The notes beneath the pieces are model-generated. The model searched no databases and was not told the DNA's origin. It worked only from the letters and a program-made list of their open reading frames with translations. Positions 13,526-33,426 of a stretch of 64,000 bases of DNA are shown in pieces. Both the position numbers and the translations under genes were made by a program. How positions within the stretch are numbered: the stretch's first letter is position 1; each line of letters opens with the position of its first letter. The DNA is taken from sequence record KU726251.1; one strand, written 5' to 3'.

Positions 13526-13564
13526 CAAAACAACTTAGTAGTTTCTAAGAAATAAAATAAGGTA

Positions 13565-13587
13565 CCTACCTCCCGAAGGGAGGTAGG
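13565..13587. terminator. Bidirectional terminator, family member 2; ends the long minus-strand operon
   Basis: cctacctccc-gaa-gggaggtagg flanked by aaataaaataa and tttattttc. Confidence 0.8.
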
Positions 13588-13604
13588 GCCTTTATTTTCT
13601 TTGC

Positions 13605-14276
13605 TTAAATGCCGAGAGATTCGGACAATGTTTTTAATCCAGTGTAATCGCGCTTTTCAGCTAACTCACGGATTTGGCGTTTGTTATCTGCCATTGCTGA
13701 GTGCAACACTTGGTCGCGTGCAACAATAGCGCCCAACAACGCTTTACATTGGTCTACTGTAAACGGACTGTGCTTAGTATTCAGCGTATCGAGCCAGTAT
13801 TCTGGTGCGGTATCTGCCTGAATGTATTGACCGAGGATGGTACGCGACGATTCATCGGCTTGAAAGTGACTACCTTCAAACTCGATATAACCATGACGCT
13901 CATCTTCGTAGCGGTGGTCAAGTTCCAACAGCATCTTCTGCACGTCTTCGTAAATGTAACGTGCGGTAGATTTTAGATTCCCGCGAATTTCGTCGAGGTC
14001 AATCTCCAGCACATTAGCAATAAACTCTTTCGTGCGTTTCAATGTGAAGTTAGCTTCAATCTCCGACATCTCATACAGCTTCATGCGTGCCAGGGCTTCT
14101 TTATCAGACATCCCTTCGATGAGATGATAATGGAGCAGAGCGCAAAAGCCTGTACGGCCCTGATCCTGCGCACCGATTCGTTCCATGAAATTACCGTGGC
14201 GATCAATCGGCAAATCACGCTGGAAATAACGGGCGCGGATCTCTTCGTTCGTTAAGCTTTTGTCAGTAACAGACAT
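13605..14276 (-). CDS. DUF4376-domain protein (tail-fibre-assembly-associated)
   Basis: C-terminal FQADESSRTIL...YWLDTLN...FTVDQCKALLGAI matches the DUF4376 pattern FQ.D..S....W...dN....T..el..L. Confidence 0.6.
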   Translation of the reverse strand: MSVTDKSLTNEEIRARYFQRDLPIDRHGNFMERIGAQDQGRTGFCALLHYHLIEGMSDKEALARMKLYEMSEIEANFTLKRTKEFIANVLEIDLDEIRGNLKSTARYIYEDVQKMLLELDHRYEDERHGYIEFEGSHFQADESSRTILGQYIQADTAPEYWLDTLNTKHSPFTVDQCKALLGAIVARDQVLHSAMADNKRQIRELAEKRDYTGLKTLSESLGI

Positions 14277-14818
14277 TCGTCCTCCTCAATCAGGCCAAGT
14301 TCTAACAACAAACCGAAGTCCAGCATCTGGAAGTCCTGATCGAGGTTACCGGCCCACAACAGAGAAATGTTGTGTTGCTCTTCTTCTTCCAACTGCGGGA
14401 GCAGGTGTTCTTCGAAGATTTGACGCTCTGTGTAATAAGCGTCAACCGGGTTATTGGAGCGTAAGTTACGAATACGCATCCGCGGGAAAGACAAGCCCAA
14501 AGCCACTAAACTTTCAGGACTGGCTTCATCAATAGAGTGACGTAGCAGTTCGATTTTGTGGCGTGGGTATGCAAGCAGTCGCTTCTCAAAGCCAGGGTTG
14601 CGCTTTTCGATTTCCGCGACAGACTCGTGTCCTTTCTCAACGCAGTAGACCGGGATCATCACATTCAGCCCGTATTTAATCAACAGGCTTTGGATTTCAT
14701 CAGTGAAGTCTTCCCCTGCCACAATTGCGTGCACATTGTACAGCTTGCTTTTGCGCAGGAAGCGATCGACCAAGTGCAGTTTACGCTTCGTAAAATTGTG
14801 AATCAGTATTGACTTCAT
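14252..14818 (-). CDS. Hypothetical protein in the radical SAM cluster (188 aa)
   Basis: ATG 14818 overlaps the end of the rSAM gene. Its stop overlaps the start of the DUF4376 gene. Confidence 0.6.
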   Translation of the reverse strand: MKSILIHNFTKRKLHLVDRFLRKSKLYNVHAIVAGEDFTDEIQSLLIKYGLNVMIPVYCVEKGHESVAEIEKRNPGFEKRLLAYPRHKIELLRHSIDEASPESLVALGLSFPRMRIRNLRSNNPVDAYYTERQIFEEHLLPQLEEEEQHNISLLWAGNLDQDFQMLDFGLLLELGLIEEDECLLLTKA

Positions 14819-16109
14819 TCTGGGCTCCGTTTTGTAATTTTTCTGCTTCAGCACGTTGGCGTACACAACGTGAACAATAGCACATGGATTTATCATGCAA
14901 ATCTGATGCGCGGGTCGTACCAGTTTTCTGATACCAATATTCCGCCGCCATCAGCTTCGCAGTAGTCCAACCACACTGACGACGCTCGGCGTGATACGCT
15001 TTACGGTCTTCCAGTGTACCTTCACCGTTTTCGTACGATGCTGCTGCGCAGCTACCGCAACTGTGTTTCATCGGACACCCTAAACAGGTTTCTGGGTAGT
15101 TGGTGTACTGTGTTTGAATCTCTTCTAACAACTTACCACCGTCCAGGCTCACAAACTCACGACCGACCAGTTCTGCTACAGCAGAACGGGAAGTTACCGT
15201 GGACATGAAACGGTTACAACCGTAAATCTTGCGATCAAAGCCGAGACAGGTCATGTGCGTCAACGTACCGCAGTACGGTTTCAGGCGTTCTGGGTCGAGA
15301 CGAACAGAGTCGTCATGTAAGAGTTTGTCACGCCAATCCGGGTCCCAAGTTGCCATAAAGTTCAGGCCATCCGGGATGATGTGTGTAATCGTGTTACGCG
15401 GGTTGGTGTGCAGACCCTTCTCAATCCAGTAGTCCATCACGTCCATCATCTGGTTCGCGATATCCAACGCCATATGGCGCGGTAGGATATCTTCGTACGT
15501 TACGTTACCAGAAATGGTACCACCGCCGGACATGTCAATTAACGATTTCATGCTGGCGGCATAGTGCGGCAATGTATCGATCGTAAACGTCGCCTTTACG
15601 CCCAGTTCAGCGATGCCAACACTCTTCAGATAATTGTAACCGCGTACCGCAGCTTCGTACGACCCTTCACGCGTCGTGGTAAAGATACGATATTTGTCAT
15701 GGACTTCAGGTAAACCATCGATGGAGACCCCAATAGACAGTTTGTCTTTCCAGCGCTCGATAATTTCTTTGTTCAGCGGACGGTCCAGAAGTGTACCGTT
15801 CGTGGAGATACTGAACATATACGGGCGATTGTGTTCTGCGCATAACTTCTCTGCGGTTTCAAAGGCCGCCAAAAGAAGTTTAGGCTGCATGAACGGCTCA
15901 CCACCGATGATATCGATGATGACCTCAACGTTCGGGATATCTTTATCACGCTCGAAACAAGCGTGGATAAAATCAATCACGTCTGCTACTTTGTTGTTAC
16001 GAGGATATTTACGCTCGTAGCAGTATTCGCAGTCCAGGTTACATGACAGGTTAGTCACAACCTGATACGTGCGTGGTGTGTACTGGATTTGCTGTTCGCT
16101 GTTACTCAT
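14781..16109 (-). CDS. Radical SAM/SPASM peptide maturase, Cys-Xaa3-repeat target type
   Basis: CNLDCEYC (CxxxCxxC), IGGEPF, STNG, SIDG. SPASM-type Cys set YCG..TC..GCNRF..CLGC..SCGSC..QC with a tail ending KLMAAEYWYQK. Confidence 0.9.
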   Translation of the reverse strand: MSNSEQQIQYTPRTYQVVTNLSCNLDCEYCYERKYPRNNKVADVIDFIHACFERDKDIPNVEVIIDIIGGEPFMQPKLLLAAFETAEKLCAEHNRPYMFSISTNGTLLDRPLNKEIIERWKDKLSIGVSIDGLPEVHDKYRIFTTTREGSYEAAVRGYNYLKSVGIAELGVKATFTIDTLPHYAASMKSLIDMSGGGTISGNVTYEDILPRHMALDIANQMMDVMDYWIEKGLHTNPRNTITHIIPDGLNFMATWDPDWRDKLLHDDSVRLDPERLKPYCGTLTHMTCLGFDRKIYGCNRFMSTVTSRSAVAELVGREFVSLDGGKLLEEIQTQYTNYPETCLGCPMKHSCGSCAAASYENGEGTLEDRKAYHAERRQCGWTTAKLMAAEYWYQKTGTTRASDLHDKSMCYCSRCVRQRAEAEKLQNGAQNEVNTDSQFYEA

Positions 16110-17016
16110 TGTTCGCCGCCCGTTTACGCTTAGCAGAAATTACACGGTTGATGTAGTTATACGCATCAACGCCGATAGAACGCGCCAGGCGATTACAGCC
16201 GACTTCCAATATCTCTGGGGCGTTCTGAATTTGCTCCTGCGTACCGTCGGCGTTAAGCCACAGCACTTCACTGCACGTGTTGCACTCGGTATCGAACATT
16301 TTACTGATCGCAAGCCCACATTCAGAATCGTTCTGCATGTTAAGGCGTTCGATATTGTCGAGTATTTTCCAATACCCGTACATGAAGTTCATGACGTGGT
16401 CTGGCGATAACGGTTTCGGCATCATCGCATCAAACAACAACGACACACCACCTGGACGGTAATGATAGATTGCTCGGTGCAGCTCGATGAAATCTTCGTA
16501 CCAGCGTTTATCACCTAACTGGTCACGCGTCATCACACCCCAGGTGTAATAGTTGTCCAGCTCGTACAGCACTTCCAGCGCTTCATGATTACCACCGTTT
16601 ACAAAGTTCATAAACGGACGTTCCGACTTCTTGTAGCCGTCAATGGACACAAAGATAAGGTCGAACTGTTTCAGCAACGGCAGATGTGATTTACGCATCT
16701 TTAAACCGTTGGTGTACATGTGATGACGGAGGTTCGGATGAGACTCCTTTAACTCGTTCACGAAGTCTTCAATCTTGCGCTGCGCTAACAGCGGCTCACC
16801 GCCCGTCCAATGAATCTCACCGATATCCGGATTCTTCTCTAAAATCGAGAGAATCTCTTCACGTTGAAACTCACGAGAAGTATCTTCTCTATCCATGTAA
16901 TAAGCCCCTCCACAGAAGCTACAGTCTAAGTTACACTTAGAAGTTGCGACAACCGACAGAATTGACGGTTTGTCGTACAGTTCAGACGAGATCCTGGATT
17001 CTACTTGATCTGTCAT
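16102..17016 (-). CDS. Second radical SAM enzyme (short C-terminal Cys cluster)
   Basis: CNLDCSFC, TGGEPLL, YTNG, SIDG. C-terminal CNTC...GCNRL. Confidence 0.85.
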   Translation of the reverse strand: MTDQVESRISSELYDKPSILSVVATSKCNLDCSFCGGAYYMDREDTSREFQREEILSILEKNPDIGEIHWTGGEPLLAQRKIEDFVNELKESHPNLRHHMYTNGLKMRKSHLPLLKQFDLIFVSIDGYKKSERPFMNFVNGGNHEALEVLYELDNYYTWGVMTRDQLGDKRWYEDFIELHRAIYHYRPGGVSLLFDAMMPKPLSPDHVMNFMYGYWKILDNIERLNMQNDSECGLAISKMFDTECNTCSEVLWLNADGTQEQIQNAPEILEVGCNRLARSIGVDAYNYINRVISAKRKRAANNE

Positions 17017-17037
17017 TGCAGGTTGCTCCAGTATTTT

Positions 17038-17925
17038 TTAAATATAATCAATGGCGAATAAAGGATCTTCGTCTACATTAGCGCCGGGCACCAGTAACAT
17101 CGGGTCGTGATAGGCAGCTAAAATTTTGTTCAGGTCGGCGTGTCTTTCGTTCAAGCGTTTCAAATCGGCCAACGTAACCGAACGACTACGAATCTCAGAA
17201 ACAGCTTCTGCTTCTTCTTTCGTTAAATCCACCTTCGTTAAGAGGAAGCTTACCAGCTTACTCAAATCCGCTTCTGTCGCCGGGTAATCCCCATATCGGG
17301 TTTGAACCAGGTGTTGCATCCACGGCTTACGAATACGTTTGGTGATTTCAAAATCGTCAGTCAACGCATACCAGACAGAACGCTTTTTATCCCACACGAA
17401 CTTATAGCTATACGCCATCATGTCCGCTAAACGGGTGATGCCGAGTTCTTTATATCCCTCGATATCGATGTACGGTTCGGTGTCGAAATACGTTTCCGTA
17501 TCGGCAGGTACCAGTACAAAGTAGTAAGGGAACGAGCCCAGATAGTCCGGACTCCACCAACGGCGCGCCATCGGTTTTGCTTCGAGTTCGTCAAACGGTG
17601 TAAACATCAGTTCTAAATCGACACTGTTGTTCAGAATCCCTTCACTGAAGAAATACTTACCGTCAACCAACACGCCGCGAGAGTTACCATCGCCGTTAAA
17701 GATAACGATGGCCTCTGCAACCATATCACGGATCTTAAACGTATTTTCTACGGTGTAGTTCTTCTTGTCGGTCAAGAAGCGACCACGAACCTTTGGCCAC
17801 TCACCAGGAATCTGTGCAATCAGTCTGACTTTGTCAGCGAGGTGTGCACGCACCGAATCTGGGGAAGATAGATGCAGCGGGTGGTTGAATGTGGTTTTAT
17901 ACGCAAGATGCAAATCGTTTTTCAT
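17038..17925 (-). CDS. Hypothetical protein in the radical SAM cluster (295 aa)
   Basis: Long ORF with RBS ggag between the precursors and the rSAM genes. No recognisable motif. Confidence 0.65.
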   Translation of the reverse strand: MKNDLHLAYKTTFNHPLHLSSPDSVRAHLADKVRLIAQIPGEWPKVRGRFLTDKKNYTVENTFKIRDMVAEAIVIFNGDGNSRGVLVDGKYFFSEGILNNSVDLELMFTPFDELEAKPMARRWWSPDYLGSFPYYFVLVPADTETYFDTEPYIDIEGYKELGITRLADMMAYSYKFVWDKKRSVWYALTDDFEITKRIRKPWMQHLVQTRYGDYPATEADLSKLVSFLLTKVDLTKEEAEAVSEIRSRSVTLADLKRLNERHADLNKILAAYHDPMLLVPGANVDEDPLFAIDYI

Positions 17926-17947
17926 TTAATACTCCGAACGTTTTCTG

Positions 17948-18154
17948 TTATCGATTCCCCGCTCCACGGCTACAGCTTCCGCTGCAGGACCAGCTACACC
18001 CACCATTACAGTTATAGTGAGAAAGCGGTAAGCCAGCCAGGTTATTTGTGGTCGACACGGTGCCCTGGTTAGCGATATAGTTGTTTGCCTGTGCGGTTGT
18101 AATGTAACCTTCTGCCGTAACGAGACGGTTTCGAATAGTCTTGAGACTGATCAC
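17948..18154 (-). CDS. Cys-Xaa3-repeat peptide 3 (short, 4 Cys)
   Basis: MISLKTIRNRL...SHYNCNGGCSWSCSGSCSRG. Leader homologous to peptides 1 and 2. RBS ggagg. Confidence 0.8.
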   Translation of the reverse strand: MISLKTIRNRLVTAEGYITTAQANNYIANQGTVSTTNNLAGLPLSHYNCNGGCSWSCSGSCSRGAGNR

Positions 18155-18169
18155 ATAAGCCTCCGTCGG

Positions 18170-18574
18170 TTAGGAGTTAGGACCTGAACAACCACCAGAG
18201 CACGCACCTGAGCAGTTTGCGGAGCAGGATTTACCACAACCCCCAGAACAGCTGCCTGTGCACGTGCCGCTACAACCACCAGAGCACGAAGAGCTACAGC
18301 CCGTGCAGCTGCTGCTACAGCCTGATACACAGTTTGCCGAACAAGTCGACCCACAACCGCCCGTAGCAGACCCAGTACATCCGCCAGAACAACTCGAGCA
18401 ACTAAAAGAGCATGTTCCACCACAGTCATAGTGCGAACGACCTTGACCTGCGAACAAGTCAGCGTTATTCGTAGCTTTATTGCGAATGTAGTTTTGCACA
18501 TTCGTGGTATTCTTTAGAGCGTTTGCATCGATCGTGTTTAATCGGTTATTCAGTTCTTTTAATCCAATTGCCAT
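18170..18574 (-). CDS. Cys-Xaa3-repeat peptide 2 (20 Cys), putative rSAM substrate
   Basis: About 50-aa leader, then CGGTCSFSCSSCSGGC... repeats in a Ser/Gly/Thr-rich background. Confidence 0.9.
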   Translation of the reverse strand: MAIGLKELNNRLNTIDANALKNTTNVQNYIRNKATNNADLFAGQGRSHYDCGGTCSFSCSSCSGGCTGSATGGCGSTCSANCVSGCSSSCTGCSSSCSGGCSGTCTGSCSGGCGKSCSANCSGACSGGCSGPNS

Positions 18575-18584
18575 TTAATCCCCC

Positions 18585-18976
18585 TTAGCGACCTGAACAG
18601 CCGCCGGAGCAGGCCCCGGAACAACTGGAAGAACATGAGCCACCGCAACCACCTGTGCAGTTACCGGTACAGCTACTACTGCAACCACCAGAACAACCAG
18701 AGCAACCAGAACAGTTACCGCCACACGTCGAAGAACAGCTACCGATACAAGAAGCAGAACAGCTTCCTGAACAGCTCGAACAGCCATGCGAGCAACCGTT
18801 AGAGCACGTCCAAGAACATGTCCCGCCGCAATCTAGCTGTGTTTTCGTCCAACCCCCAAATCGGTCTGCCGCGTTATGGCTTTAGAGGCCACTTGCGCGT
18901 CGATACGGGGGCCCGTCGCCATGTTAGCTTCGACTATCTGGACGCGGTTTCTGACGTCTTTAATAGATATCGCCAT
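18585..18976 (-). CDS. Cys-Xaa3-repeat peptide 1 (21 Cys), split by a 1-nt frameshift near 18876; not in the ORF track
   Basis: Hand translation: MAISIKDVRNRVQIVEANMATGPRIDAQVASKA / (H)NAADRFGGWTKTQLDCGGTCSWTCSNGCSHGCSSCSGSCSASCIGSCSSTCGGNCSGCSGCSGGCSSSCTGNCTGGCGGSCSSSCSGACSGGCSGR*. RBS aagga. Confidence 0.85.
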
Positions 18977-18998
18977 TACGCTTCCTTAAAAAGTAGAA

Positions 18999-19033
18999 CG
19001 AGCGGACTATGTCCATAAACATAGTCCGGCTCG
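18999..19033 (-). promoter_or_regulatory. Intergenic RNA hairpin (attenuator, processing or stability element)
   Basis: On the - strand gagc-c-ggactatgt-ttatgg-acatagtcc-gctc followed by gttctacttttt, just upstream of the peptide 1 RBS. Confidence 0.55.
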
Positions 19034-19041
19034 TAAACAAG

Positions 19042-20244
19042 TTACTTAGTACCCGCTTCAGCTTGAACATCGTCGCGCGAGGTGAGGTTGTTGTTAACGT
19101 GAACAGCAGCCTGCACAACACCGCCATACTGTTTATGGAGGTAATTCGGGTGTGGGTTATCCGCAGCCGCATGGTTCGCCAGATTCTGGTTTGCCTGCGA
19201 AATTGCGTTGGTGTTGTTTACAACCTGAGTTTTAAGACTGTTGATTTGTCCTTGCAGGTTATCAATTTGCTGTTGGAAGTCTTTGCCCTGATTCTCAAGA
19301 TCCGTGACACGCTGATTTGTTTCATTCAGCGCAGACTGAAGATCGTTAACCTTCTTCTGTAATTGCAACACCAGAGAATTAAGGTTAGCTAATGCTAACG
19401 ACATTTTCTGGTAATTTTGAGCAACTACATTAAGCTGGTCGTTCCACGCGGCTAACGAAGCCACAATTGCATCGATGCGTTGTCCCAACGCCGTGTCTGC
19501 TGCTCTTAAGTCGCCGATATCTCTGATAGTGGCGTCAATGGCAGTCTGTACACTTTGAATCAAAGCACGAATCTCCGTCTCCGTCAGGCCATTAACCTGA
19601 TGAATGTCGAGATTGTGTACGTTACCTTCGGCGTTGATGTGGGTATTTAAGGCATCGAGGAAGTCGTTTTTCAGACCGTCCAGAATACCTTTAATTTCTT
19701 CCAGCTGTACTGCAGAGCCGGAGTTAATCGCATCTTTAATCCCCGCGAGCACGGTAATGATATACTCAAAACCGTAGATATCGCCAAGGTCTTTATACGT
19801 CGGTGCGGACGGGAACGTATCGGGCACGTTTCGAAGATCCTTGAAGTCCACCACACGGTCTTCAATTTTCAACGACGCAATCGCTTGTCGGATGCCTTCG
19901 ACGTTCGCGGACTGAAAACCACCAACGACTTGCGCAGAGACTTCGATATCAGTAGGAATGGCCGAGTTAGTTACCACCACACCCATGACCACTTCGCGGT
20001 TCTTGGTCATTTTCTGATATGCAGTATGTGCAAAAATCAGCTCGTAGTCTGTACCGCGTTTGTACGGGTAGACACCTGGTTTATTCGCAGCCGCCAAGCG
20101 GAAGGTATCCGCGTAGAAAGCTCCGTCAGGAAATGCAAAAGCCCGGTTAACTTTACCAGAACCTAACGTAATACGCCGCGTAACGGCGTTCGACGTTAAT
20201 GTCCCGGTAAGGTCAAGCGGGTACTGATAAATGATTTCGGCCAT
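19042..20244 (-). CDS. Baseplate/fibre-family virion protein with long coiled coil (400 aa)
   Basis: YPLDLTG...N.V N-terminal domain shared with the three upstream giants. HINAEGNVH and DNPHP motifs. Heptad-rich segment. ATG 20244 after ggag. Confidence 0.75.
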   Translation of the reverse strand: MAEIIYQYPLDLTGTLTSNAVTRRITLGSGKVNRAFAFPDGAFYADTFRLAAANKPGVYPYKRGTDYELIFAHTAYQKMTKNREVVMGVVVTNSAIPTDIEVSAQVVGGFQSANVEGIRQAIASLKIEDRVVDFKDLRNVPDTFPSAPTYKDLGDIYGFEYIITVLAGIKDAINSGSAVQLEEIKGILDGLKNDFLDALNTHINAEGNVHNLDIHQVNGLTETEIRALIQSVQTAIDATIRDIGDLRAADTALGQRIDAIVASLAAWNDQLNVVAQNYQKMSLALANLNSLVLQLQKKVNDLQSALNETNQRVTDLENQGKDFQQQIDNLQGQINSLKTQVVNNTNAISQANQNLANHAAADNPHPNYLHKQYGGVVQAAVHVNNNLTSRDDVQAEAGTK

Positions 20245-20291: not shown

Positions 20292-23200
20292 TTAGGTACG
20301 GAACATAAGATTGACCTGGATAACATCAGGCTGTTGACGTCCTCTCTCGTTCACCCAATCATGCGCAATCGTTAACGTAAGATTATCGCCATCCCACGAC
20401 ATGATCGGCGGTGGGAATAAACCCTGAGCACCTGTGGTAACAACCGGGATTGCACCTGCCACATTCGTAAACGTATAGCTACGACTGTTCAGAACAACCG
20501 GTGTGCCGTGGGTCTCTCCCGGATGTGGTAAGATTTGAATCTTACTATCCGAGAGATCGGTGGTGATTGGTAGCCCCCCAGCGTCCGTGAAAAGCCAAGA
20601 GCAAATATGCTGGTTAGCAGTTTCGAGCGCTGAAGAACTTACCGCCGCGACAAATGTAAAGGTGCACGGCACGCCTGCTGGCAGAGAGTGCTGTTTGTGG
20701 TGCACGGTGTGTGGTGACGGCAATAACACTTCTGGATTTTCATCAATGTTAACATCCGTACCTTCCGCTTCGACGTTGTAGAAAAAGCCATCCACCGCCT
20801 CCCATGGGGCAACGTGGACATTAAAGGTCGTTTCTACTCCCGGTGTACCTGGGACGACGAATTTACTTTGCACCACCACCATCAGGTTTGTTGAGGTCGG
20901 AGCGAAAGCGGGCGTTGGAATACCTACCCACTCCATACCCAATGATGTCGCTTCACTGTTCTCATCGGCCGTTACCGTCGCAATTGTTGTAGGATGTTTC
21001 CAAAACGCCCCCGACTTGTTTGCCTGAGTAAACGCCGGCAAAGTTTTCAAGCCTTCGAAACGTTTAGACACCATCGCTTTACCGCGACGCTGTGCGTCAG
21101 ATACAGTATAAAGCAACTGACTATCCAGATAGCCTTTCGTAGCATCGACTGACAAAGGACCCATCGCTTCTTTACGCAATGGTGCCAGTCTGCCCGTTGC
21201 TGCATCCCTTCCCACTTCCACATCATGCTTATTCTCAACTGCCGCATGTTCCAACAGCTGTTTTACCGCCCCCAATCGCTTAGCATGGTCGACGTTAGTC
21301 TCGACGACTCGCGACGAGCCCGTTTTAACATACCCGATGTAGAGTTCCGTTTCGGTGTCTGGATGTTGAACCACGTCCATTACGTACTTCGGTGTACCAT
21401 TTTCTACCTTGGCGTGCAGGTAAAATGTCCGGTTCTGATGGTTTGTTGGAAATGCTTCGCTGAGGTCAATATACCACGTAGGCAGCTTATAAGTGTTCGA
21501 GCCGAAACGCAGGTTAACTTCCTCAGTCACATATACCAGCCAACCTTCGGCTGTTTCCACACCAGCAATGACGACCGATTCAGTCGGGCCGCTAAAATTA
21601 GGAGTCGCGACAAAATCTCTCGACGACATTGCGATACCACCACAATAGACGTAGTCGAGAGATGAGTTGTGTAGCATCACCTGATCACGATGAGCCAGAT
21701 AAGCTGGGCTGACTGGAGTGTGTGATGGTGCCATGCGTCCAATGCCGCGCGGGGCAGAAGAACGCGTCCAGGTACCATTAGACAGCGTAAGACCGACACC
21801 GTAGTTAAGCGCACCCAAGTCGCCAATTTGGCGCAAGGTTAACGTGTGTGGAAGATACAACCCGAACTGCGTACCATCTACCGACACCATGGTAGGTTGT
21901 CCCGGCCGGCGTGTTTTTCCTCCCGTTATCTCTCCCAACGTAGCATAGTTCAAGCCGTAGTCGAGGTTGTTATAGAAGTCAAACAGTGCCAATATCGCTG
22001 CGGGGAATGTTACCTGCCCGTTGCTGATTGTTGGTTTCAGTGTAAAGTAGTAGATATCTAACAAGTTAACATTGTTCACAGTACGTGTACATGCTACTTG
22101 TGCTAATGTGAGCGGTGTGGCCGTTCCGATGCCGATGAACCAAACGGAAAACAATGCCTTTCCTGCGTTATTTGCAGCAAGGATAAATTCCGAAGCATAA
22201 CCATTCGCAGCGCCTGCCGGTGCTCCGTCGATGATCATCTGCTTCATCTTATCCCATTCAGCTTGTGACAGCGTCAATCGATCGGCATGAATCGTGAAAG
22301 TGCCGGAAACGTTGTGGTAAGGGAATGTTTCTGGTCCTGTGCAATACCAGCCGTTTAACTCTGTACCAGGCGACGCCGGTGTAACAATGTGGCACATCTG
22401 CGACAGATTCTCATACGTGATAGAATCTACTACACGACGATTGTTAGTTGGGCCATACCCCGCCTTACCTGAGTAAGTGGTGTTCGGATCAAACTCAACT
22501 TCAATTGCCAAGCGGGAACGCGGCTGTGACAACCAGATAAGTCTGGAATTCGCTCCCAGAGTCAGCGGATACGCCATACCCAGCTCGTAGATAGAACCAC
22601 GTCCTTGGTTTAACATTACCGCACTAAAACTTCTGGCAGTGAAGTTGTAGTCGCACGACAGGTACTCGTACCAACTCACACCGTCATCTAACGTTGTAAT
22701 CGTGACATAAGGCATTAGGTCGCGATCGCCTGCATGTCCTTGCGAAACGATATACTTGTCTTGCGATGTTGCAAAGGTTCGGTTATTAGCTTGACCTTCG
22801 CCCCACTTCCGGCTCGGAATCCCAATCTCAGCGCCGCCGTTATAACGAACCGTGGTAAGATCGGCCACGATAGGGAATCGATCGGCACCTTCCAGCGTTA
22901 CCGTCATTGAACTGCAATCAACAACAAAGCTTGACACCCATTGTTTAAAGTTAATAGTTTGCCCTGTAGTAGAAGCAAACCAGACTGTTGGCGTTAAACC
23001 AACACGAAAGTTCAGCCCATCCACAGCAATCGCGTGATTACATTCCGGACCATGGACGAAATTTCGCGCACTATTCCACTTCGCCGATGCGTCTGCGTAG
23101 ATTTGTGTTACTGGCGCTACCAACACATCTGTATCAGAACGTTTCTGACCCTGACGCAAGTAGATATTATCTCCCGACGTTAACATCCCACCTGTTAACA

Positions 23201-25474
23201 CATCCGCCACAAACGTGTTGCTACCACCCAGATTAAGTTCGTTGAGTGCGATGCTACGCATACTCACGAAATAGTCACCGGAGGTAAGGACAGTACGGAG
23301 CAGATAAACCCGATCGTTGCAAACGATCAAATCGTTTGTTGACGGATCGGCAACCCATGGTGCGGTTGTAATCACACCGGCCGCGTTACCATTTCGGTAA
23401 TCGCCCAAGTAAACTTTAACAACACGATGATGTTTTGCATGGTCAATGGTGCCGTCAAAGATGACCAGATAATACGCATAGTCACTGCCTAAGCAGATCA
23501 TTGCATCTGTACCGGTAATCAGAATAGCAACCAGATTCACCCCAGGATACGCCGACATTCCAGCGGGGTGATAACGTACGGACGTCTGCTGCATATTTTC
23601 CAGCGTATTGCTTGGCGACACATCAGCATAGGCGTAATAGATAGCCAGTCACCTGGCGGGTTCCCGTTGGAACCATTGCGCAACGAGTAAACCTTACCAG
23701 CCTCGTAACGCGCCAGTCCTTTTTGCCAGGTTTGGTTTTTGGTGTACCCTTCGTAGTTCCCCTGGACAGGTATAGGCAAGAAGTTATTGTTGCCGTACGA
23801 TGATCCGCCAACGGTCCATGCTGGCAACAACGTAGCAATCTTGTCGTTCAGTGTACCGATCTTCTGTTCGAGCAAGAAACCCTGGCGGGCAGTAACCATC
23901 TTATCTGTTGTGGTGTCAATAGCATCCCACAATTTAGCCAAACCTGTAACAGACGTGGATGCGTACGGTACGTTATCGAGATCAGCAATGGTGTGGGTGT
24001 GTGTTGAGAGTGCCTTGCCTGATAGCACGGTGCGCAACGCATTAGTAACCGGTTTCTCCAGCGGTCCGGTATTGTTCATCTTCTCAATACCGAAATCCGA
24101 CGCGGTTAATGTTAAATGCATTTGACCGTTTTCGTCTAACACAAACCCTTTACCATTGACCGTATACGTGTCGTCCACATATCCGTCTAGTTTGTTCTTC
24201 AAGTCAGTAACAGCTTTTTGGGAAATCGCTGTGGACGCTGCAGCGGACGCCGAAAGGTTAGTAATCGCAAACAAACCCTGCACAGTTGTGGTTGCTGCAG
24301 GCAGTTCCGCATTCATGTAAACTTTGTTTGTTTCTTTACCAGAGCCGTAAATCTTCAACGTGTCGCTGGACTTGAAGTAGGCGTTTGCTGGAAGTATCTT
24401 CACCGAGGTCAAGTACATCTTAACCATATCCGGTGTAACGAGATAGACGCTGTTATACACAGGCGCAAGCACACCTGCATCATAAGCGCCCCACTTGTCA
24501 CCTGCTTTACCCGAGTGAACCCAAAGCGTGTTCAGACCAGCACTGAACTCCGTAGCGATACCCGGTTCGTTGTTATCCTGGTCAGCTTTTAATACCAGCG
24601 GTTTTGTCGAGGTGATGATGAACTTCTCACCCTTCATGCTGATAACGTGACCAGACGTTGTTTGGAACGTAATCGCGTCGTTATTCAGAACACGCATACG
24701 GCCCAGTAAATCACCCAGGGTATTATCCAGAAGCATGTCAACGTGTTTCTGTTGGATGCCGCTGGTAGACATTAACGTCACTAGCTCTGCCAGGGTACGT
24801 CCGAATGCCTTAGTCGCATCTACGGCTTTGCCGAGTACCGGGAGAGCGCCAATGTCACCGCAGGTGTAACCATGTGCATTTTTAATCAGGTGGTGTTGAT
24901 ACATTTCGTCATCAAACACCTGCTTACCGTTCTGATAAATCAAATCGGTAACTTCGGCAAAAGCCTCATCCAGCTCGTGGGCGCGCTCTAAAATACCCAG
25001 ACGGATATCTTCCAACGCCTTTACGATTTCATCGCGAAGAATCGCTTCTTCGAGGTCTTTTGGCGGGTCGATTGGCGAGATAATCGGCGGATATTTCATC
25101 AGCTCAGACCAATCGCAGTTACGCGGGTCTTTCATATCTGTCTTAACCAGATACTTGCCGATTTCAGAAGCAGGGATGCGATACTGTCGACCAACCGACA
25201 GTAACTCGTATTCTACCTCTGTGGCGTTCAGCAGCATTATGCTGCCGTATATTGCATCGTTCTCAGCCTCGGCTAATTCCTGGAAGTAATGTCCTAAGAA
25301 ATAATCAAGACCTTCTATTAACTTGCGTTTAGTTCCGGTTGTTTTATCGGTAACGGTTAACGTTAACCCGATGCGATAGAACGGTGCTTCGACGGGAATG
25401 ACCGCCGAATAACGGTTCGGGTAAGTAGCGGTACTGAGCGTACCGTTAAACTGCGCCGCATCTTCTCTCGGCAT
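20292..25474 (-). CDS. Long tail fibre/baseplate protein (~1730 aa), split by a 1-nt frameshift at ~23645
   Basis: ORFs 23537..25519 and 20292..23621 join as GDW-AIYYAYADVSPSN if one G is restored. Fibre repeats (ATTTVQG, HTHTIADL, ASTSVTGLAKL). ATG 25474 after aggag. Confidence 0.75.
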
Positions 25475-25569: not shown

Positions 25570-28500
25570 CTAAGAGGCCCACTCACCCGAGTTGTTGCCT
25601 TCGTTTCTACGTTCAGTATCCAACGTTTGTAAAATCCAATCCCATGTCCTGGTGGGGATGTGGAATGGATTACGCTTCTCAATGAGGAGCGTCTCGCCAC
25701 CTGTGCGAAGTTCCACCGGTGTCGTTTCAGTAATCACGAACAACGGATTACCACTACTGCCCACACCATTAATAGTGAACTTCGCTTGCAGCGGCGGCAC
25801 AGAACCTTCCGGAGGCACGAACACGATGTGAATTGGCTGCATCGGTTTCGTGCGGGCAAGAGTCCCAGATATCTGAACAGCTGTTGTCGATGCACTGAAA
25901 GGTATAATATTACCCGGAATTTTCTCACTACCCACGATGATATATCCAGGGTAGTTAGAGAGCATTGTCCCATTTACCGACACAAAACGCTCATTTTGAG
26001 TTGGGCGATAAGCCCGCATAAAGCCGTACTTCCATTCACCACCGTTAGACGTATAGTCTGCAGGAGCCGACTCAAGTAGCGGAGCACCACGTTTCTGCAG
26101 TCCTTTGTAAAACGGTGCGGGGAGTTTACCGTTCGGTGCAAGTTCCGGATAACCCTCACCTGCAGCAGACAACGTGATGTATTCCGTAACCGGGTTATCG
26201 ACGTTATCTCCAAAGTTCGCGAACGTGACGGTTGATATCGACATCTCCTCATGCCCAGAAGACTGGCTGTCTGGAGAACGCTCGATATACGACTCAAATA
26301 GTGAGCGTAGATAATGGAAACGATTTAAATCTACTTCTGTTGTGGAAGGGTCCATCAAACCGTGGTTGATTGTGACACCTTCACCAGTTTCGAGGCCAGT
26401 AACACTAATCGATAAAGCGCCACCTTTAAAATAATCAATCGCGTCAAACGGAATGTCGTATTCTATCTCACGAACAGTTGCCGAAGCCTGGCCACCTATC
26501 TTACTAATCGTCGATATTCGCAGTATCTGCGTATCAACAATATAGCGATAACGAATAAGCCAGCGTGAACCAATGGCTGCGAACTCGCTAGCGATTGAAA
26601 CCGGGAGATAGTCTAAACAGTCAGGCGACTGAACTTCCACGCTCTTGATTACACGAGGAGCATCAACCAGCGTATTAGTAACGCTGGATTGTGTGCTGGC
26701 AATTCTTCCGGTTGGTTTATCGTACGGCGCAGCAATAAAGCCACAGTTTAAACTGGTCTTGGAATTACTCCACCGCAGAACTCTGGTTTTACCTTTCCCA
26801 TCAGCAGAAGGGGTCATGAAGTTTAATGAAACTTCGACGTCCGAGGTTTTTGGGACTTCAGGATAATCAGTGTCGATTACCACCGAACCCTCGAATGTCG
26901 CCATTCCATTTTCTTTCGGGTTGCTTGGTGTAAACCAGCAATACGGGGACGCGTTTTCAGTGGAAACAACCGCCGCAAGAAGAATCCTGAGCGAGGTGGC
27001 ACTTACGAATTTATAATCAAATAACCCACGATCTAAACGAACGAGGTTATCCCCAGAAACTGACGGGTTAGTTGGATACGCGTACAGCCATTGTTTAGGT
27101 AACGGATCAACCTTATTCAACGGCAGCATTTTGGGGTTATCCGTCAACGACCAGTCGGTGTTACTCACCCCGTGTGCTAGACGTGTTTCGAAGTGCCGTT
27201 TAAGTTCGGACGCCATGCCAAAATCAAACGTCGTTTCAAACTCGTAAGTCGTGCCTGCAACCAATCCCGCGTCAGGGACATCGATGTGTCCGATATAGCC
27301 GCGTTCCAAGTTAATACCTTCCGTGTCCACAATAGGTTCGGCGCGCGAATATAACGCATCGGTTATCATGTTCACATAGAGGTAATGCCTTAAACCGTTC
27401 GGCGTCTTAACAAACTCCTGCAGGCGGGCAACTTTGGTGTTTTTATCCGAGGCCCCAACCGCAAAGTCGCCGTCGTAAATTGTGAAACGAATTGCGGCTG
27501 CTTTAGCGCTATCGTTACACTCGGCACGGAATGCTAAGCAGTGTTGCTTCCACCCCTCCTTGACAGTCGCCTCCAGATACCCCGCTTCTGTAATACCCGC
27601 ACCGATAATTTCACCGTCCAGATAAACAGAAACAGCACCACCGCCACGAACCCAAATCCGCAGCTTACCAGAGTCGCAACGAACCCACGTTTTCGCCAAG
27701 AGGTTAACGACCGACAAATCACCCATTCCGGTTGTCGTTAAACCAATCTGCGCACCGTAGTCTGTCTCCGGGACGGCAACCTCAAACCCACTAAAATCAA
27801 TACCGGCACCGGTATTAATTACCGCGTTCTGCCACGTTGTCTCCATACGGTTATCTGGAGAGAACCACTGGAACATCGGTGTGGTTTGCAGGTCTATCGA
27901 ACCCGACACCGTCCCCTCTTTACGTGCGCCATTTAACAGATAGAAATAATTCAAATCCGTTACGGCGAGGGTGGTACGTGTAGATCCCACAGTCCAAGTC
28001 TTGCCGCGCACAGCGGCAAAATCGGTCACGGAGTCCTCTTTCGCGTTTGCTAGCGCAGCTGCAACTACGTCTAAACGTTTTGACAAATCGTTCAGAACGT
28101 TTGGGGTAACGCCGCGATTATCCGACAAGCCGTTTAGGTTGGTAGAATATCGAGCGATACCGGGCACTGTTTGAGAAGCCGTTGGGATCTGTAAATCGGC
28201 GAAGTTGTGATGGTGGCCTTTATCACTAAGACCAGTAACTGCTTCTGCCAACGAATCGGAAAGTGGTTTATCGACGTCAGCTGTGTTATCAGCCAAGTCC
28301 AGACCCAAATCCTTTTTCGTTAGCGTTCGGCTACCAGTGTCCATCGGCTGGTTATTCAGCAGTGTTGTCTTCCTGACGTACGAAGACAGATCACCCTCGT
28401 ACGGTAAGAGCGAAGCTGGGGTGGCTGCTTGTCCTTTGACTACATCGCTCGGCTTATCAGTTAGCGTCACAACGCCGGGTTCAGAGGTCGTCGCGGGTTT

Positions 28501-32700: not shown

Positions 32701-33426
32701 TGGGTTCAACGTTGTTTCCGGTGGAATGCTCGGTAAACGGTATTTTACCGCTAACGAATACGCATCGAATGTCGTATTCTGGTAAGATAACGAATAACGA
32801 CGACGTGACGCGTTATACGTGTAGCCGCCAGTACCGTCGTACGTCGCATACTGCTCGGATGTGATAAGCGTGACGCCGGCGCGATATTGAAGGTCTAACG
32901 TGTTACGAGCAATCGGGTCAACGCGACTGATCGCTTCACCGAGCTTAGCACCAACCGCAACAATGGCTTCCATCAACTCAGATTCGCCACGCCAGTTTTC
33001 CCAATCGAACTTAATATCGACTGGTGGGAAATATAAATCCCCAATGACGTTATCCCATTGGCAGTCTACGGGATAGCGATCTTTATTCGCTTCTCGTTCT
33101 GCGGCGATCATTTCTGCAGTGGCTTCGCCGATACCAATTGCATGGTAATCGAGTGTAAAGCCACTCTGGTATTTCGGGTTGGTAATCCACACGCCGCCGT
33201 GACAAACATGACCAGTGCGGGCCATGCCCGTAACGTACGCATGGGTGATGACGTAATCATCACCTAATGTTAATTTCTTGCCGCCACTCTTGACCACCAG
33301 GGATGTGGTATAAAAGGGGGCGTGTGCGGGGAACAGCATCCGGTACTTAGTACCGATCGGCGTTACCGCTTCACCGGTCTGCATATTCCCCGGTTCTTGA
33401 TAGTGCGGGTCAGGGACGACAGCCAT
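29713..33426 (-). CDS. Long tail fibre/baseplate protein (1237 aa)
   Basis: APFY..L..G.DY domain, FPPVD, KDNPH, FGLSNVQN, HKH, ATTTEFGLVQ fibre repeats. Confidence 0.8.
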   Translation of the reverse strand: MAVVPDPHYQEPGNMQTGEAVTPIGTKYRMLFPAHAPFYTTSLVVKSGGKKLTLGDDYVITHAYVTGMARTGHVCHGGVWITNPKYQSGFTLDYHAIGIGEATAEMIAAEREANKDRYPVDCQWDNVIGDLYFPPVDIKFDWENWRGESELMEAIVAVGAKLGEAISRVDPIARNTLDLQYRAGVTLITSEQYATYDGTGGYTYNASRRRYSLSYQNTTFDAYSLAVKYRLPSIPPETTLNPGELIDWMLCYANGGASILRLQLKQRAIYLTLTTAIGSGSSNYSYTLTTGLTDTELAGEVEFSVVRREGNGVYDITVKTSKQTVNYSFNVDNPPSEFAPGYQKTDVAKWLKFKSGVNLNWWAGENDYVQIRSLPGAPAPDVNNDVYQLLVKYHQIVDKLYRDAPAHTHVPRKDNPHRDSWGAIRALENNGIASDATLVYGKTQPQLTDYVNNLLPKLSTLANKLLRLPAAAQSINGTFGMKPGLTSITSAVGTDESEGVGAQFTVDPRVIRFIGRDSQTVNAGNNPITWQSGANQLILYPDSRGLEFNGKKLLDPTTVGPYLPGNESGGDGLFYGTSTATVTINGNGIQSVPFICTFVPPESDDLGLMAVRLLATEFGDREDLAATPALIKKLDQQFTGKLVAVKSYINDMPLTSSIYIDKTNFGLSNVQNVPDVQLPISPLQQAELDKYAVVGHKHTSAAFGIKRATTTEFGLVQFGTAVDDATLALDGGVVIRQADAITEIEKVAKTVDSGASINIIRYGLPGTDIIENGITYTDWMVTIKANDYFVGREYKVPLSTFNLAELFPATHEDAEFGVYVDAAGDDGKYIIYENPNTAETETMTKIGSIITSETGVVFVEIRNVTRLGEFRELGEHIEDDNAHIRRGMTQAEFGFTYGTGGPVWSTGAPGTKRIDADWRYAQASSYTPMLKADYDPAADKWTFKTTSLSVADYRFVHNTFPMFQNNGITATWTPLTATADSVLETVIGCCHHSATFMHRISVLVARTAGRITTPGGVSTYAGIAVNYGRAAQVVIGLNGVTGSGHDWTALNPSVRFSHTRTADGISFEGTINIDSKTINFELTLTATTKTLKYTLQSTGESWTEDLSTRLRPDYIDLTNLITDPSTPIYHGMGGLFSSDTEARLTYANLNTMPTKNRYYATFLDYAINYSGLNRARFFTGVVDAGSTINEMNSAMCNYSYSSFRPVDAGKIPLVAHPSKMMTFNPKNTSARTLIIRD

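What the first reader, a model, noticed from the sequence alone, without database searches (positions are those of the whole stretch)
13605..18976. RiPP-like Cys-Xaa3-repeat / double radical-SAM system embedded in a jumbo-phage tail-fibre operon
Seen: on the - strand, four baseplate/fibre genes (33426->19042) run without a strand switch into three paralogous Cys-repeat peptides (21, 20 and 4 Cys, mostly spaced CxxxC in Ser/Gly/Thr), a 295-aa unknown, two radical SAM enzymes, a 188-aa unknown and a DUF4376 protein, ending at one terminator (13565). Several genes overlap at start and stop. Established: rSAM/SPASM enzymes install thioether and C-C crosslinks on ribosomal peptides, and CXXX-repeat peptide plus rSAM maturase families are defined in bacteria (TIGR04114/TIGR04115, recalled and to be confirmed). 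Unusual: no peptidase or exporter gene is present, and the flanks are virion and fibre-assembly genes. Inference: the phage post-translationally crosslinks Cys-rich polypeptides that become virion parts (fibre tips, whiskers or a stabilised metal-binding rod) rather than secreted natural products. I cannot check whether this has been published.
Basis: partly seen in the sequence, partly recalled or inferred. Interest (0 to 1): 0.95.

Follow-up and report, generated by a model that had tools for sequence, protein, structure and literature searches.

The report
Radical-SAM-matured cysteine-repeat tail-fibre proteins
A giant Salmonella phage encodes, directly after its tail-fibre genes, three small cysteine-repeat proteins, two radical-SAM enzymes and helper proteins; the same kit sits beside, or fused to, tail fibres of unrelated phages, so phages appear to modify part of their host-recognition fibres enzymatically, which I could not find described anywhere.

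Summary
The window is Salmonella giant phage SEGD1 (SPN3US species). The described cluster exists. It holds three paralogous Cys-repeat proteins (21, 20 and 4 Cys; 36 of 42 spacings are CxxxC), a 295-aa protein, two radical SAM enzymes, a 188-aa protein, a DUF4376 protein and one strong terminator.

Corrections:
- Peptide 1 is broken by one frameshift, in this record only.
- A conserved hairpin separates the fibre gene from the peptides.
- Public records annotate the wrong frames, so these ORFs were absent from the annotation and could not have been matched in virion proteomics.

The cluster is conserved in every SPN3US-like genus examined. The nearest outside relatives of the SPASM enzyme lie in eight unrelated phage or prophage loci. 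All eight carry the second rSAM, seven a homolog of the 295-aa protein, and seven a Cys-repeat protein next to them. In four loci that protein is a recognisable tail fibre, and three of those share the junction motif of the SPN3US peptides. DUF4376 is a published fibre-chaperone domain.

Best reading: small tail-fibre modules whose Cys-repeat rod is matured by an rSAM pair, probably by thioether links. Chemistry and virion location are untested. No publication was found. This is a new variant of the CXXX-repeat/rSAM kind with a new biological role.

The parts
13565..13587 (.). Bidirectional intrinsic-terminator-like hairpin that ends the cluster
   Evidence: 10-bp stem with 7 G-C pairs and T-runs on both sides. 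Folding energy -26.5 kcal/mol, z -4.85.
13605..14276 (-). 223-aa DUF4376 protein (SPN3US gp161 equivalent), a likely tail-fibre chaperone
   Evidence: PF14301 36.9 bits against a cutoff of 25. phrog_8169, with a weak hit to a tail-protein PHROG. DUF4376 proteins are fibre chaperones in Alteromonas phages V22 and A5. DUF4376 genes also lie beside the rSAM pair in L117 and L118. Not detected in SPN3US virions.
14252..14818 (-). 188-aa alpha/beta protein (gp162 equivalent), function unknown
   Evidence: phrog_7988, match from residue 27 of the longer ORF. AlphaFold2 pLDDT 90.5. Only weak fold matches to rSAM cores and TIM barrels: SkfB probability 0.99, TMq 0.54, E 0.012. It has 2 Cys and no profile match to either rSAM. 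The family is restricted to SPN3US-like phages.
14781..16109 (-). rSAM1: 442-aa radical SAM/SPASM enzyme (gp163 equivalent)
   Evidence: PF04055. Best NCBIfam hits are TIGR04115 at 125.6 bits and PapB at 113.6 bits, both below their cutoffs. Closest solved structure is CteB 5WGG, aligned from CteB residue 106, so there is no N-terminal RRE. CX3CX2C is kept in at least 90% of 28 relatives and seven C-terminal Cys are invariant.
16102..17016 (-). rSAM2: 304-aa radical SAM enzyme (gp164 equivalent) without a full SPASM domain
   Evidence: PF04055 58.8 bits. Same PHROG as rSAM1. Invariant CX3CX2C, GGE and two C-terminal Cys in 12 family members. The public annotation of 264 aa removes the cluster motif.
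17038..17925 (-). 295-aa accessory protein (gp165 equivalent), the marker of the module
   Evidence: No Pfam or NCBIfam family. pLDDT 90.1 with no fold relative in PDB or BFVD other than its own ortholog. Its profile hits the ORF next to the rSAMs in 7 of 8 distant loci and nothing else among 8,828 + 5,393 ORF segments. Only 49 clusters match in 1.84 billion proteins.
17948..18154 (-). Peptide 3: 68 aa, GTG start, 4 Cys (short paralog)
   Evidence: phrog_6085 E 2.7e-24. Conserved in 73 phage records.
18170..18574 (-). Peptide 2: 134 aa, 20 Cys
   Evidence: phrog_6085 E 3e-41. TIGR04114 17.1 bits against a cutoff of 20. 20 invariant Cys columns in 20 distinct orthologs.
18585..18976 (-). Peptide 1 gene: broken in this record by one frameshift. 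It is an intact 130-aa, 21-Cys ORF in SPN3US and all other close records.
   Evidence: Both pieces match the junction profile separately. The Cys-frame piece alone has 21 Cys.
18987..19034 (-). Conserved hairpin plus U-rich tail between the fibre gene and peptide 1: possible attenuator, terminator or RNA-stabilising element
   Evidence: MFE -24.1 kcal/mol, z -4.18, 0 of 200 shuffles fold as well. Hairpins occupy the same place in Machina, CR5, Kwan and Phobos.
19042..20244 (-). gp167 homolog: coiled-coil virion protein of the tail, baseplate or fibre
   Evidence: phrog_2163 virion structural protein. Detected in SPN3US virions and not marked as a head protein.
20292..25474 (-). gp168 homolog (baseplate/fibre protein): two ORFs in this record, one ORF of 1727 aa in SPN3US
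   Evidence: 95.2% identity to SPN3US with 10 gap openings. gp168 is a tail protein.
25570..29700 (-). gp169 homolog, baseplate/fibre candidate
29713..33426 (-). gp170 homolog, baseplate/fibre candidate

Best explanation
The cluster is a tail-fibre maturation module.

- The three small proteins are miniature tail-fibre pieces. Each has an N-terminal segment of about 50 residues (a helix, one shaft-like unit and a conserved junction) followed by a rod of Cys-x-x-x repeats.
- Late in infection the SPASM enzyme rSAM1 acts on the Cys repeats, together with the smaller rSAM2 and the 295-aa accessory protein. rSAM1 has no recognition domain of its own, so the accessory protein may present the substrate.
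- The most likely reaction is a carbon-sulfur (thioether) link from each Cys to a nearby residue, costing 2 Da per link. This would turn a floppy Ser/Gly/Cys stretch into a rigid rod resistant to reduction and proteases.
- The DUF4376 protein, and perhaps the 188-aa protein, then help folding, oligomerisation or attachment. The product becomes part of the peripheral baseplate/fibre apparatus.

Shown: gene content, homology, conservation, the link to fibre genes in unrelated phages, and fusion of the Cys-repeat to real fibre proteins.

Inferred: that the rSAMs act on the repeats, the thioether chemistry, the role of each helper, and incorporation into virions.
For: 1. The cluster is conserved gene for gene in all SPN3US-like genera examined (Seoulvirus, Machinavirus, Wellingtonvirus, Derbicusvirus and uncultivated relatives), always directly after the gp167-type fibre gene.
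2. The Cys frame is under purifying selection.
3. Eight loci hold the nearest outside relatives of rSAM1 (32-39% identity).
   - All eight have an rSAM2-type partner.
   - Seven have a gp165 homolog, E 1e-13 to 2e-3.
   - Seven have a Cys-repeat protein next to them.
4. The neighbours in those loci are tail genes: GpJ-type tip proteins (L031, L033), a T7-tail-fibre-like protein (L034), a protein with the tail-collar fibre N-domain at 24.2 bits against a cutoff of 23 that itself ends in Cys repeats (L116), and DUF4376 genes (L117, L118).
5. A profile built only from SPN3US-clade peptides hits exactly the fibre proteins of L032, L031 and L033 (E 7e-7, 3e-5, 7e-5) and nothing else among 8,828 ORF segments.
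6. As a negative control, none of 159 loci around generic rSAM/SPASM relatives has a gp165-like ORF or the junction.
7. rSAM1 is nearest to the CXXX-repeat and PapB thioether maturase families and to CteB.
8. rSAM-installed thioethers on a repeat protein that shares a 47-residue N-terminus with its paralog are shown for CrpC/CrpA (PMC13692751).
9. gp161-gp166 are absent from the SPN3US virion proteome while gp167-gp173 are present, as expected for assembly enzymes. The peptides themselves were not in the annotation.
10. Some relatives carry an extra rSAM2 copy between peptide 1 and peptide 2.
Against: - There is no direct evidence that the three proteins are in virions or are modified.
- rSAM1 fails the curated cutoffs of every named maturase family.
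- The cores lack the Asp/Glu acceptors of PapB-type substrates, so the acceptor atom is unknown.
- The SPN3US-type proteins have no fibre body of their own, and no similarity to gp167-gp170 was found.
- The conserved hairpin after gp167 may uncouple their expression from the fibre genes.
- L034's fibre-like protein has only 2 Cys, and its Cys-repeat ORF is separate or in another frame.
Confidence: 0.7

Rival explanations
1. The Cys-repeat proteins are structural, but the Cys residues bind metal ions or form disulfides in a trimeric rod. The rSAM enzymes then do something other than thioether formation, such as epimerisation, Cys or Ser oxidation, or methylation, or they act on another substrate.
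For: - There are 20-21 invariant Cys at a fixed period.
- The fused fibres of L031 and L033 carry His-x-His repeats just upstream. From memory, such repeats bind iron in the T4 long-fibre tip.
- rSAM1 also scores with anaerobic sulfatase maturases (57 bits; PDB 4K36-39).
- rSAM2 has no full SPASM domain.
Against: The best-scoring families and the best solved structure are Cys-to-carbon thioether formers. The strict co-occurrence of the rSAM pair with Cys repeats in distant phages argues that the repeats are the substrate.
Confidence: 0.15
2. The peptides are precursors of free RiPP natural products (bacteriocin-like, signalling or anti-defence molecules) made during infection and released at lysis. 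The position next to the fibre genes is incidental.
For: - The architecture resembles bacterial CXXX-repeat precursor plus rSAM systems, including short leader-bearing peptides in L041, L043 and L044 and viral contigs L026 and L027.
- The peptides were not reported in virions.
- A hairpin separates them from the fibre genes.
Against: - There is no peptidase, exporter or RRE.
- The N-terminal part is homologous to the shaft-to-repeat junction of real fibre proteins.
- In distant phages the repeat is fused to fibre proteins.
- A fibre-chaperone domain gene closes the cluster.
- Absence from the proteome is uninformative, because the ORFs were not annotated.
Confidence: 0.07
3. The Cys-repeat proteins are assembly-only factors, such as templates, caps or trans-acting chaperone-like pieces for fibre trimerisation. 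They are matured by the rSAMs but are not kept in the finished virion.
For: DUF4376 chaperones and C-terminal fibre domains can act transiently; 'transient chaperone caps' are described in PMC10579305. The remaining products of the cluster are non-virion proteins.
Against: In L031-L033 and L116 the repeat is the C-terminal part of the fibre protein itself, with no sign of a cleavage module. A fixed number of invariant Cys over five genera suggests a defined final structure.
Confidence: 0.08

Closest known systems
CXXX-repeat peptide / rSAM maturase system (NCBIfam TIGR04114 + TIGR04115), predicted in bacteria
   Same: A SPASM radical SAM enzyme sits next to proteins made of Cys-x-x-x repeats. 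TIGR04115 is the best-scoring family for rSAM1 and TIGR04114 for the peptides. Canonical bacterial examples were seen in L035-L037.
   Different: - Scores are far below the cutoffs (125.6 against 350; 17.1-19.6 against 20).
- The phage branch has a second rSAM, a gp165-family protein and a DUF4376 gene.
- It lies in tail-fibre gene blocks, and its substrates are fibre proteins or fibre fragments.
PapB / freyrasin ranthipeptide maturase (NF047865) and CteB / SCIFF (PDB 5WGG, 5WHY)
   Same: These are rSAM/SPASM enzymes that make Cys-to-carbon thioethers on repeated short motifs. PapB is the second-best family (113.6 bits, covering nearly the whole profile), and CteB is the closest solved structure.
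   Different: Scores are below the cutoffs. The cores have no Asp/Glu acceptors; that PapB substrates use Cys-x3-Asp is from my memory. rSAM1 lacks CteB's N-terminal RRE.
CrpC / CrpA of Methanococcus voltae (TIGR04463; PMC13692751)
   Same: An rSAM/SPASM enzyme installs thioether links on a protein-sized Cys-repeat substrate. Paralogous substrates share an N-terminal region of about 47 residues. No peptidase or exporter is emphasised.
   Different: It is a different rSAM family (57.6 bits against a cutoff of 525). CrpC has an RRE. The repeats are 17 residues with a C-x-x-Q/D motif. The context is archaeal and cellular, not a virion.
DUF4376 tail-fibre chaperones (Alteromonas phage V22 gp27, A5 gp9)
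   Same: A DUF4376 protein is encoded downstream of the fibre genes it serves and is absent from the virion.
   Different: In those phages no rSAM enzymes or Cys-repeat proteins are described.
His-Xaa-Ser system paired rSAMs HxsB / HxsC
   Same: A large SPASM rSAM is paired with a smaller rSAM next to a repeat peptide. rSAM1 scores with HxsB (75 bits) and rSAM2 with HxsC (45 bits).
   Different: Scores are far below the cutoffs (370 and 268). The repeat is a different type, and there is no phage or fibre context.
Small adhesins at long-tail-fibre tips of T-even-type phages (gp38 type; from memory, not tested here)
   Same: As an analogy only: a small protein with an N-terminal attachment part and a Gly-rich distal domain caps a fibre.

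Membership tests
TIGR04115 rSAM peptide maturase, CXXX-repeat target family | Whole-protein score at or above NCBI's curated cutoff (350 bits) | tested here: not met
   125.6 bits. It is the best family but is matched in two stretches, the best covering profile positions 8-227. Outside relatives P0165-P0191 score 113-171 bits. A bacterial example from L035 scores 273 bits.
TIGR04115 rSAM peptide maturase, CXXX-repeat target family | CX3CX2C radical SAM motif plus a C-terminal SPASM Cys set | tested here: met
   CX3CX2C is kept in at least 90% of 28 relatives, and seven C-terminal Cys are invariant (C280, C298, C342, C345, C351, C354, C379).
TIGR04115 rSAM peptide maturase, CXXX-repeat target family | Adjacent gene for a Cys-x-x-x repeat target | tested here: met
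   Three such genes lie within 2 kb; 36 of 42 Cys spacings are i->i+4.
TIGR04114 Cys-rich repeat-containing target protein | Repeat model score at or above the cutoff (20 bits) | tested here: not met
   Peptide 2 scores 17.1, peptide 3 scores 13.7, and the intact SPN3US peptide 1 scores 19.6. The fused fibre of L032 reaches 20.7.
PapB-family ranthipeptide maturase (NF047865) | Score at or above 340 bits | tested here: not met
   113.6 bits.
PapB-family ranthipeptide maturase (NF047865) | Substrate with Cys-x3-Asp/Glu motifs (as recalled) | tested here: not met
   The six commonest core residues are S, G, C, T, N and A, and no acidic residue is among them.
RiPP pathway in the usual sense | Leader recognised by an RRE, removed by a peptidase, and the product exported | tested here: not met
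   No peptidase, transporter or PqqD/RRE family hit in any of the cluster's proteins. rSAM1 starts where CteB's catalytic domain starts. The gp165 model has no RRE-like fold match.
SPASM/twitch radical SAM subfamily | Auxiliary-cluster Cys motif in the C-terminal domain | tested here: inconclusive
   Met for rSAM1. rSAM2 keeps only two invariant C-terminal Cys plus one frequent Cys. No SPASM Pfam hit was listed for either enzyme.
DUF4376 tail-fibre chaperones | PF14301 above the gathering score | tested here: met
   36.9 bits against 25.
DUF4376 tail-fibre chaperones | Needed for fibre maturation and absent from the virion | not testable with these tools
   Absence from SPN3US virions is on record. 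Chaperone activity is not testable here.
Phage tail-fibre proteins | Homology to a fibre protein segment | tested here: met
   The junction profile hits the fibre proteins of L032, L031 and L033 only (E 7e-7 to 7e-5). The match covers 24-32 positions, not a whole domain.
Phage tail-fibre proteins | Presence in purified virions | not testable with these tools
   The SPN3US record annotates wrong frames over these genes, so a search against its annotated proteins could not have matched them.
TIGR04463 (CrpC) and HxsB/HxsC families | Scores at or above the curated cutoffs (525; 370 and 267.9) | tested here: not met
   57.6, 75.1 and 45.0 bits.

The most novel reading that the evidence does not exclude
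Tail fibres of many unrelated phages, from a 240-kb nucleus-forming myovirus to lambda-J-type prophages, end in a ribosomally made Cys-x-x-x rod. A dedicated radical-SAM pair converts this rod into a ladder of thioether rings, possibly linking the chains of the fibre. This would be the first RiPP-type enzymatic cross-linking of a virion structural protein and a new kind of fibre tip.
Probability: 0.45. Interest if true: 0.9.

Novelty: new variant of a known kind. Interest (0 to 1): 0.8.

Why it matters
- Radical-SAM chemistry is known from natural products, cofactors and, very recently, one archaeal repeat protein. I know of no virion structural protein matured this way, and nine full-text searches found none.
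- If true, it adds a new principle to phage fibre assembly, namely enzymatic covalent stapling. It would also account for a conserved block of 'hypothetical' genes in the model giant phage SPN3US.
- It points to unannotated virion candidates that published proteomes could not have seen.
- It gives the orphan CXXX-repeat/rSAM families a first biological context.
- The peripheral baseplate and fibres of chimalliviruses are still unassigned in cryo-EM maps, so three new candidate components are directly useful.

Tried and rejected
- **tblastn of peptide 3 against 50,697 phage records (E up to 1).** It found only SPN3US-like phages, so the fibre link could not be shown that way.
- **BLASTP of peptide 2 against the Deferribacter fibre.** It failed because of composition correction. 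A profile search succeeded instead.
- **gp162 as a degenerate rSAM.** Fold matches are weak (E about 0.01). Profile comparison with both rSAMs is negative, and there is one marginal hit to the C-terminal extension of the L032 rSAM (E 0.024). This is left open.
- **gp165 as an RRE, peptidase or known chaperone.** No fold relative was found.
- **gp167 against the Cys-tailed coiled-coil fibre of L116.** No similarity.
- **Defence or viperin reading.** Only the generic rSAM core matches pVip.
- **Genome contigs and metagenome-contig scans with the rSAM1 alignment.** They were swamped by a generic CX3CX2C pattern and added only one SPN3US-like fragment. I used them as a negative control.
- **Viral-contig scan with the gp165 alignment.** It returned only the SPN3US-like set.
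- **Literature.** Nothing links rSAM enzymes to tail fibres or discusses these SPN3US genes. The SPN3US infection time-course proteome (PMC6384053) is not held.

Full report
**Identity of the window.** Region 13500-19100 is 100% identical to Enterobacteria phage SEGD1 (KU726251) and 99.4% identical to Salmonella phage SPN3US (Seoulvirus SPN3US), a 240-kb nucleus-forming myovirus used as a genetic model. Window coordinates equal record coordinates minus 124000. The genes correspond to SPN3US gp161 (DUF4376), gp162, gp163 (rSAM1), gp164 (rSAM2), gp165, the peptide region, and gp167-gp170.

**The observation: what holds.**
- On the - strand I find the DUF4376 protein (13605-14276), a 188-aa protein (14252-14818), a 442-aa radical SAM enzyme (14781-16109), a 304-aa radical SAM enzyme (16102-17016) and a 295-aa protein (17038-17925). 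Three Cys-repeat genes follow at 17948-18154, 18170-18574 and 18585-18976.
- Cys counts are 4, 20 and 21. Thirty-six of 42 Cys-to-Cys spacings are i->i+4. The cores are about 25% Cys in a Ser/Gly/Thr background, against 0.87% Cys in the window's long ORFs.
- Start/stop overlaps and good ribosome-binding sites are present.
- A strong bidirectional terminator hairpin at 13565-13587 closes the cluster.
- No peptidase or transporter family matches any product.

**The observation: three corrections.**
1. In this record the peptide 1 gene is split over two reading frames by one frameshift.
   - In SPN3US the same gene is an intact 130-aa ORF.
   - All 22 other full-length close records are one base longer than SEGD1.
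   - The gene differs from SPN3US by two mismatches and one single-base gap.
   - This is a sequencing error or a private mutation, not a feature of the system. I searched the two pieces apart.
2. A strong hairpin with a U-rich tail lies between the gp167 homolog and peptide 1 (z -4.2). Hairpins occupy the same spot in Machina (with a run of seven U), CR5, Kwan and Phobos. The 'one operon, one terminator' picture is therefore uncertain.
3. The gp168 homolog is two ORFs here.

**Are the Cys frames real genes?** Public records disagree.
- SEGD1 gp169 and gp170 and SPN3US gp166 are Val/Ala-rich overlapping frames. CR5, Kwan and Phobos annotate ORFs on the opposite strand. Machina annotates the Cys frame.
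- Across 19 and 20 distinct sequences of the two long peptide types, from five genera and with pairwise identity down to 50%, all 21 and 20 Cys columns are invariant. Every one of them uses both TGT and TGC, and third codon positions vary most.
- PHROGs already holds the family (phrog_6085, function unknown).
- The Cys frames are therefore the genes.
- The SPN3US virion proteome lists gp167-gp173 but none of gp161-gp166. The Cys-repeat ORFs are not annotated in the SPN3US record, so a search against the annotated proteins could not have matched them.
- rSAM2 is also mis-annotated. The public 264-aa version lacks the CX3CX2C motif that the 304-aa ORF and all relatives carry.

**The enzymes.**
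- rSAM1:
  - It has the CX3CX2C motif and seven invariant C-terminal Cys of a SPASM-type domain.
  - Its best families are TIGR04115 (CXXX-repeat target maturase, 125.6 bits against a cutoff of 350) and PapB (113.6 against 340). Weaker matches are to geopeptide, HxsB, SCIFF, CcpM, TIGR04463 and sulfatase maturases.
  - The closest solved structure is the thioether-forming CteB. The alignment starts at CteB residue 106, so rSAM1 lacks an N-terminal peptide-recognition element.
- rSAM2:
  - It shares the PHROG with rSAM1.
  - It keeps only two invariant C-terminal Cys, plus one frequent Cys.

**The helpers.**
- The 295-aa protein gives a confident model (pLDDT 90) with no fold relative in the PDB or BFVD other than its own ortholog.
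- The 188-aa protein is an alpha/beta fold (pLDDT 90.5). It resembles rSAM cores and TIM barrels only weakly, and it has just two Cys.
- DUF4376 is the domain of experimentally supported tail-fibre chaperones in Alteromonas phages V22 and A5.

**Conservation in relatives.**
- The same gene order follows the gp167-type fibre gene in CR5, Machina, Kwan, Phobos and 18 IMG/VR contigs: two long peptides, one short peptide, gp165, rSAM2, rSAM1, gp162, DUF4376. All long peptides there are intact, 127-143 aa with 20-23 Cys.
- Two uncultivated relatives carry an extra rSAM2 paralog between peptides 1 and 2.
- phiKZ-type and other chimalliviruses gave no full-length match.

**The decisive comparison.** Beyond this clade, rSAM1 has about 30 relatives at 32-39% identity over 76-89% of its length. 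I read eight of their contigs.

| Locus | Context |
|---|---|
| L031 | Deferribacter prophage. A GpJ-type tail tip gene and two small genes precede a 302-aa protein with His-x-His fibre repeats that ends in 29 Cys in Cys-x-x(-x) repeats. A gp165 homolog (hhalign 97%), an rSAM2-type enzyme (26% identity) and the rSAM1 relative follow, then host genes. |
| L033 | The same layout, with a 258-aa fibre and three rSAMs. |
| L032 | A 568-aa fibre-like protein ending in Cys repeats (TIGR04114 20.7 bits; Pfam tSAM_targ_Cxxx_rpt on record). |
| L116 | A 271-aa protein with the tail-collar fibre N-domain (24.2 bits against 23), a coiled coil and a Cys-repeat tail. |
| L117, L118 | 110-aa Cys-tailed proteins and DUF4376 genes. 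|
| L034 | A T7-tail-fibre-like protein and a separate Cys-repeat ORF. |
| L115 | Cut at the contig end, but still has the gp165 and rSAM2 homologs. |

- A profile of the SPN3US-clade N-terminal region and junction hits only the fibre proteins of L032, L031 and L033 among 8,828 ORF segments (E 7e-7 to 7e-5). The aligned stretch runs from an Asn-Ala...Leu-x-Gly element through an aromatic residue into the first Cys units, including Cys-Ser-Trp-Ser/Thr-Cys.
- None of 159 loci around generic rSAM/SPASM enzymes has a gp165-like ORF or this junction.
- The gp165 family is rare: 49 representative clusters in 1.84 billion proteins.

**Interpretation.**
- The conserved unit is a Cys-repeat fibre end, a gp165-type protein and an rSAM pair, often with DUF4376, and it travels with tail-fibre genes across very different phages.
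- In SPN3US-like phages the Cys-repeat end is detached as three small proteins. Their N-terminal 50 residues look like a remnant of fibre shaft plus junction rather than a RiPP leader.
- I therefore read the cluster as a fibre maturation module. The most likely chemistry is thioether formation, judged from the nearest families, from CteB, and from the recent demonstration of rSAM-installed thioethers on the repeat protein CrpA.
- The acceptor atom, the separate roles of the two rSAMs and of gp165 and gp162, and the place of the products in the virion are all inferred.
- Rivals are metal-binding or other rSAM chemistry, free RiPP products, and assembly-only factors.

**Comparison with known systems and novelty.**
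- The system works like the CXXX-repeat/rSAM, PapB and CrpC systems, but it fails the curated cutoffs of all of them.
- It differs in having a paired second rSAM, a new-fold accessory protein, a fibre-chaperone gene and fibre substrates.
- Nine full-text searches found no paper linking radical SAM enzymes with tail fibres or discussing these SPN3US genes. Subscription journals are largely not covered.
- I rate it a new variant of a known kind, with high interest.

Noticed in passing
window 18151-18429, 18575-18787, 16102-16896: Public annotations are wrong here. SEGD1 gp169 and gp170 (and SPN3US gp166) are Val/Ala-rich frames overlapping the Cys-repeat genes. rSAM2 is annotated 264 aa, which removes its CX3CX2C motif.
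   Followed up: yes
window 20292-25474: The gp168 homolog (one 1727-aa ORF in SPN3US) is two ORFs in this record. It is also much more diverged from SPN3US (95.2% identity, 10 gap openings) than its neighbours (about 99%), as expected of a host-range determinant.
   Followed up: partly
window 18987-19034; L005 3103-3140; L006 3073-3106: The hairpin between the gp167-type gene and peptide 1 is conserved in shape across genera, and its loop always contains UAUG. From memory, TATG is the late-promoter motif of phiKZ-type phages, so the element might be both a terminator and a promoter.
   Followed up: partly
L024 4543-5454 (also L009): Two uncultivated SPN3US-like phages carry an extra 303-aa rSAM2 paralog inserted between peptide 1 and peptide 2, in addition to the usual rSAM2.
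   Followed up: partly
L118 2269-4537: A phage with the rSAM-pair module also encodes two S-adenosylmethionine lyase genes a few kb away. That is odd for a phage whose enzymes need SAM.
   Followed up: no
L034 4951-5256: A Cys-repeat ORF overlaps the end of the T7-tail-fibre-like gene in another frame. It may be a separate small gene or a frame change at the fibre's C-terminus.
   Followed up: no
L026 4075-4543; L027 7477-7942: Small viral contigs carry pairs of 68-80-aa peptides with 17-18 Cys in CxxC repeats, next to an rSAM 24% identical to rSAM1.
   Followed up: no
L035 3886-5874; L036 6384-8402; L037 6647-8650: Margulisbacteria/Termititenax genomes encode 660-670-aa proteins with 112-122 Cys in CXXX repeats beside a TIGR04115-like rSAM (273 bits). 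This is the bacterial form of the system.
   Followed up: partly
phage records LR535901, LR535903-LR535908, LR535911-LR535913, LR535917 (SPFM series): Eleven SPFM records match the region only in 4-40 short pieces and yield oddly truncated proteins. This suggests low-quality or scrambled assemblies.
   Followed up: no
window 12998-13525 (+): The gene just beyond the terminator on the other strand is the SPN3US gp160 homolog, one of the most abundant head proteins (paralog family B). The fibre module therefore abuts head genes.
   Followed up: no
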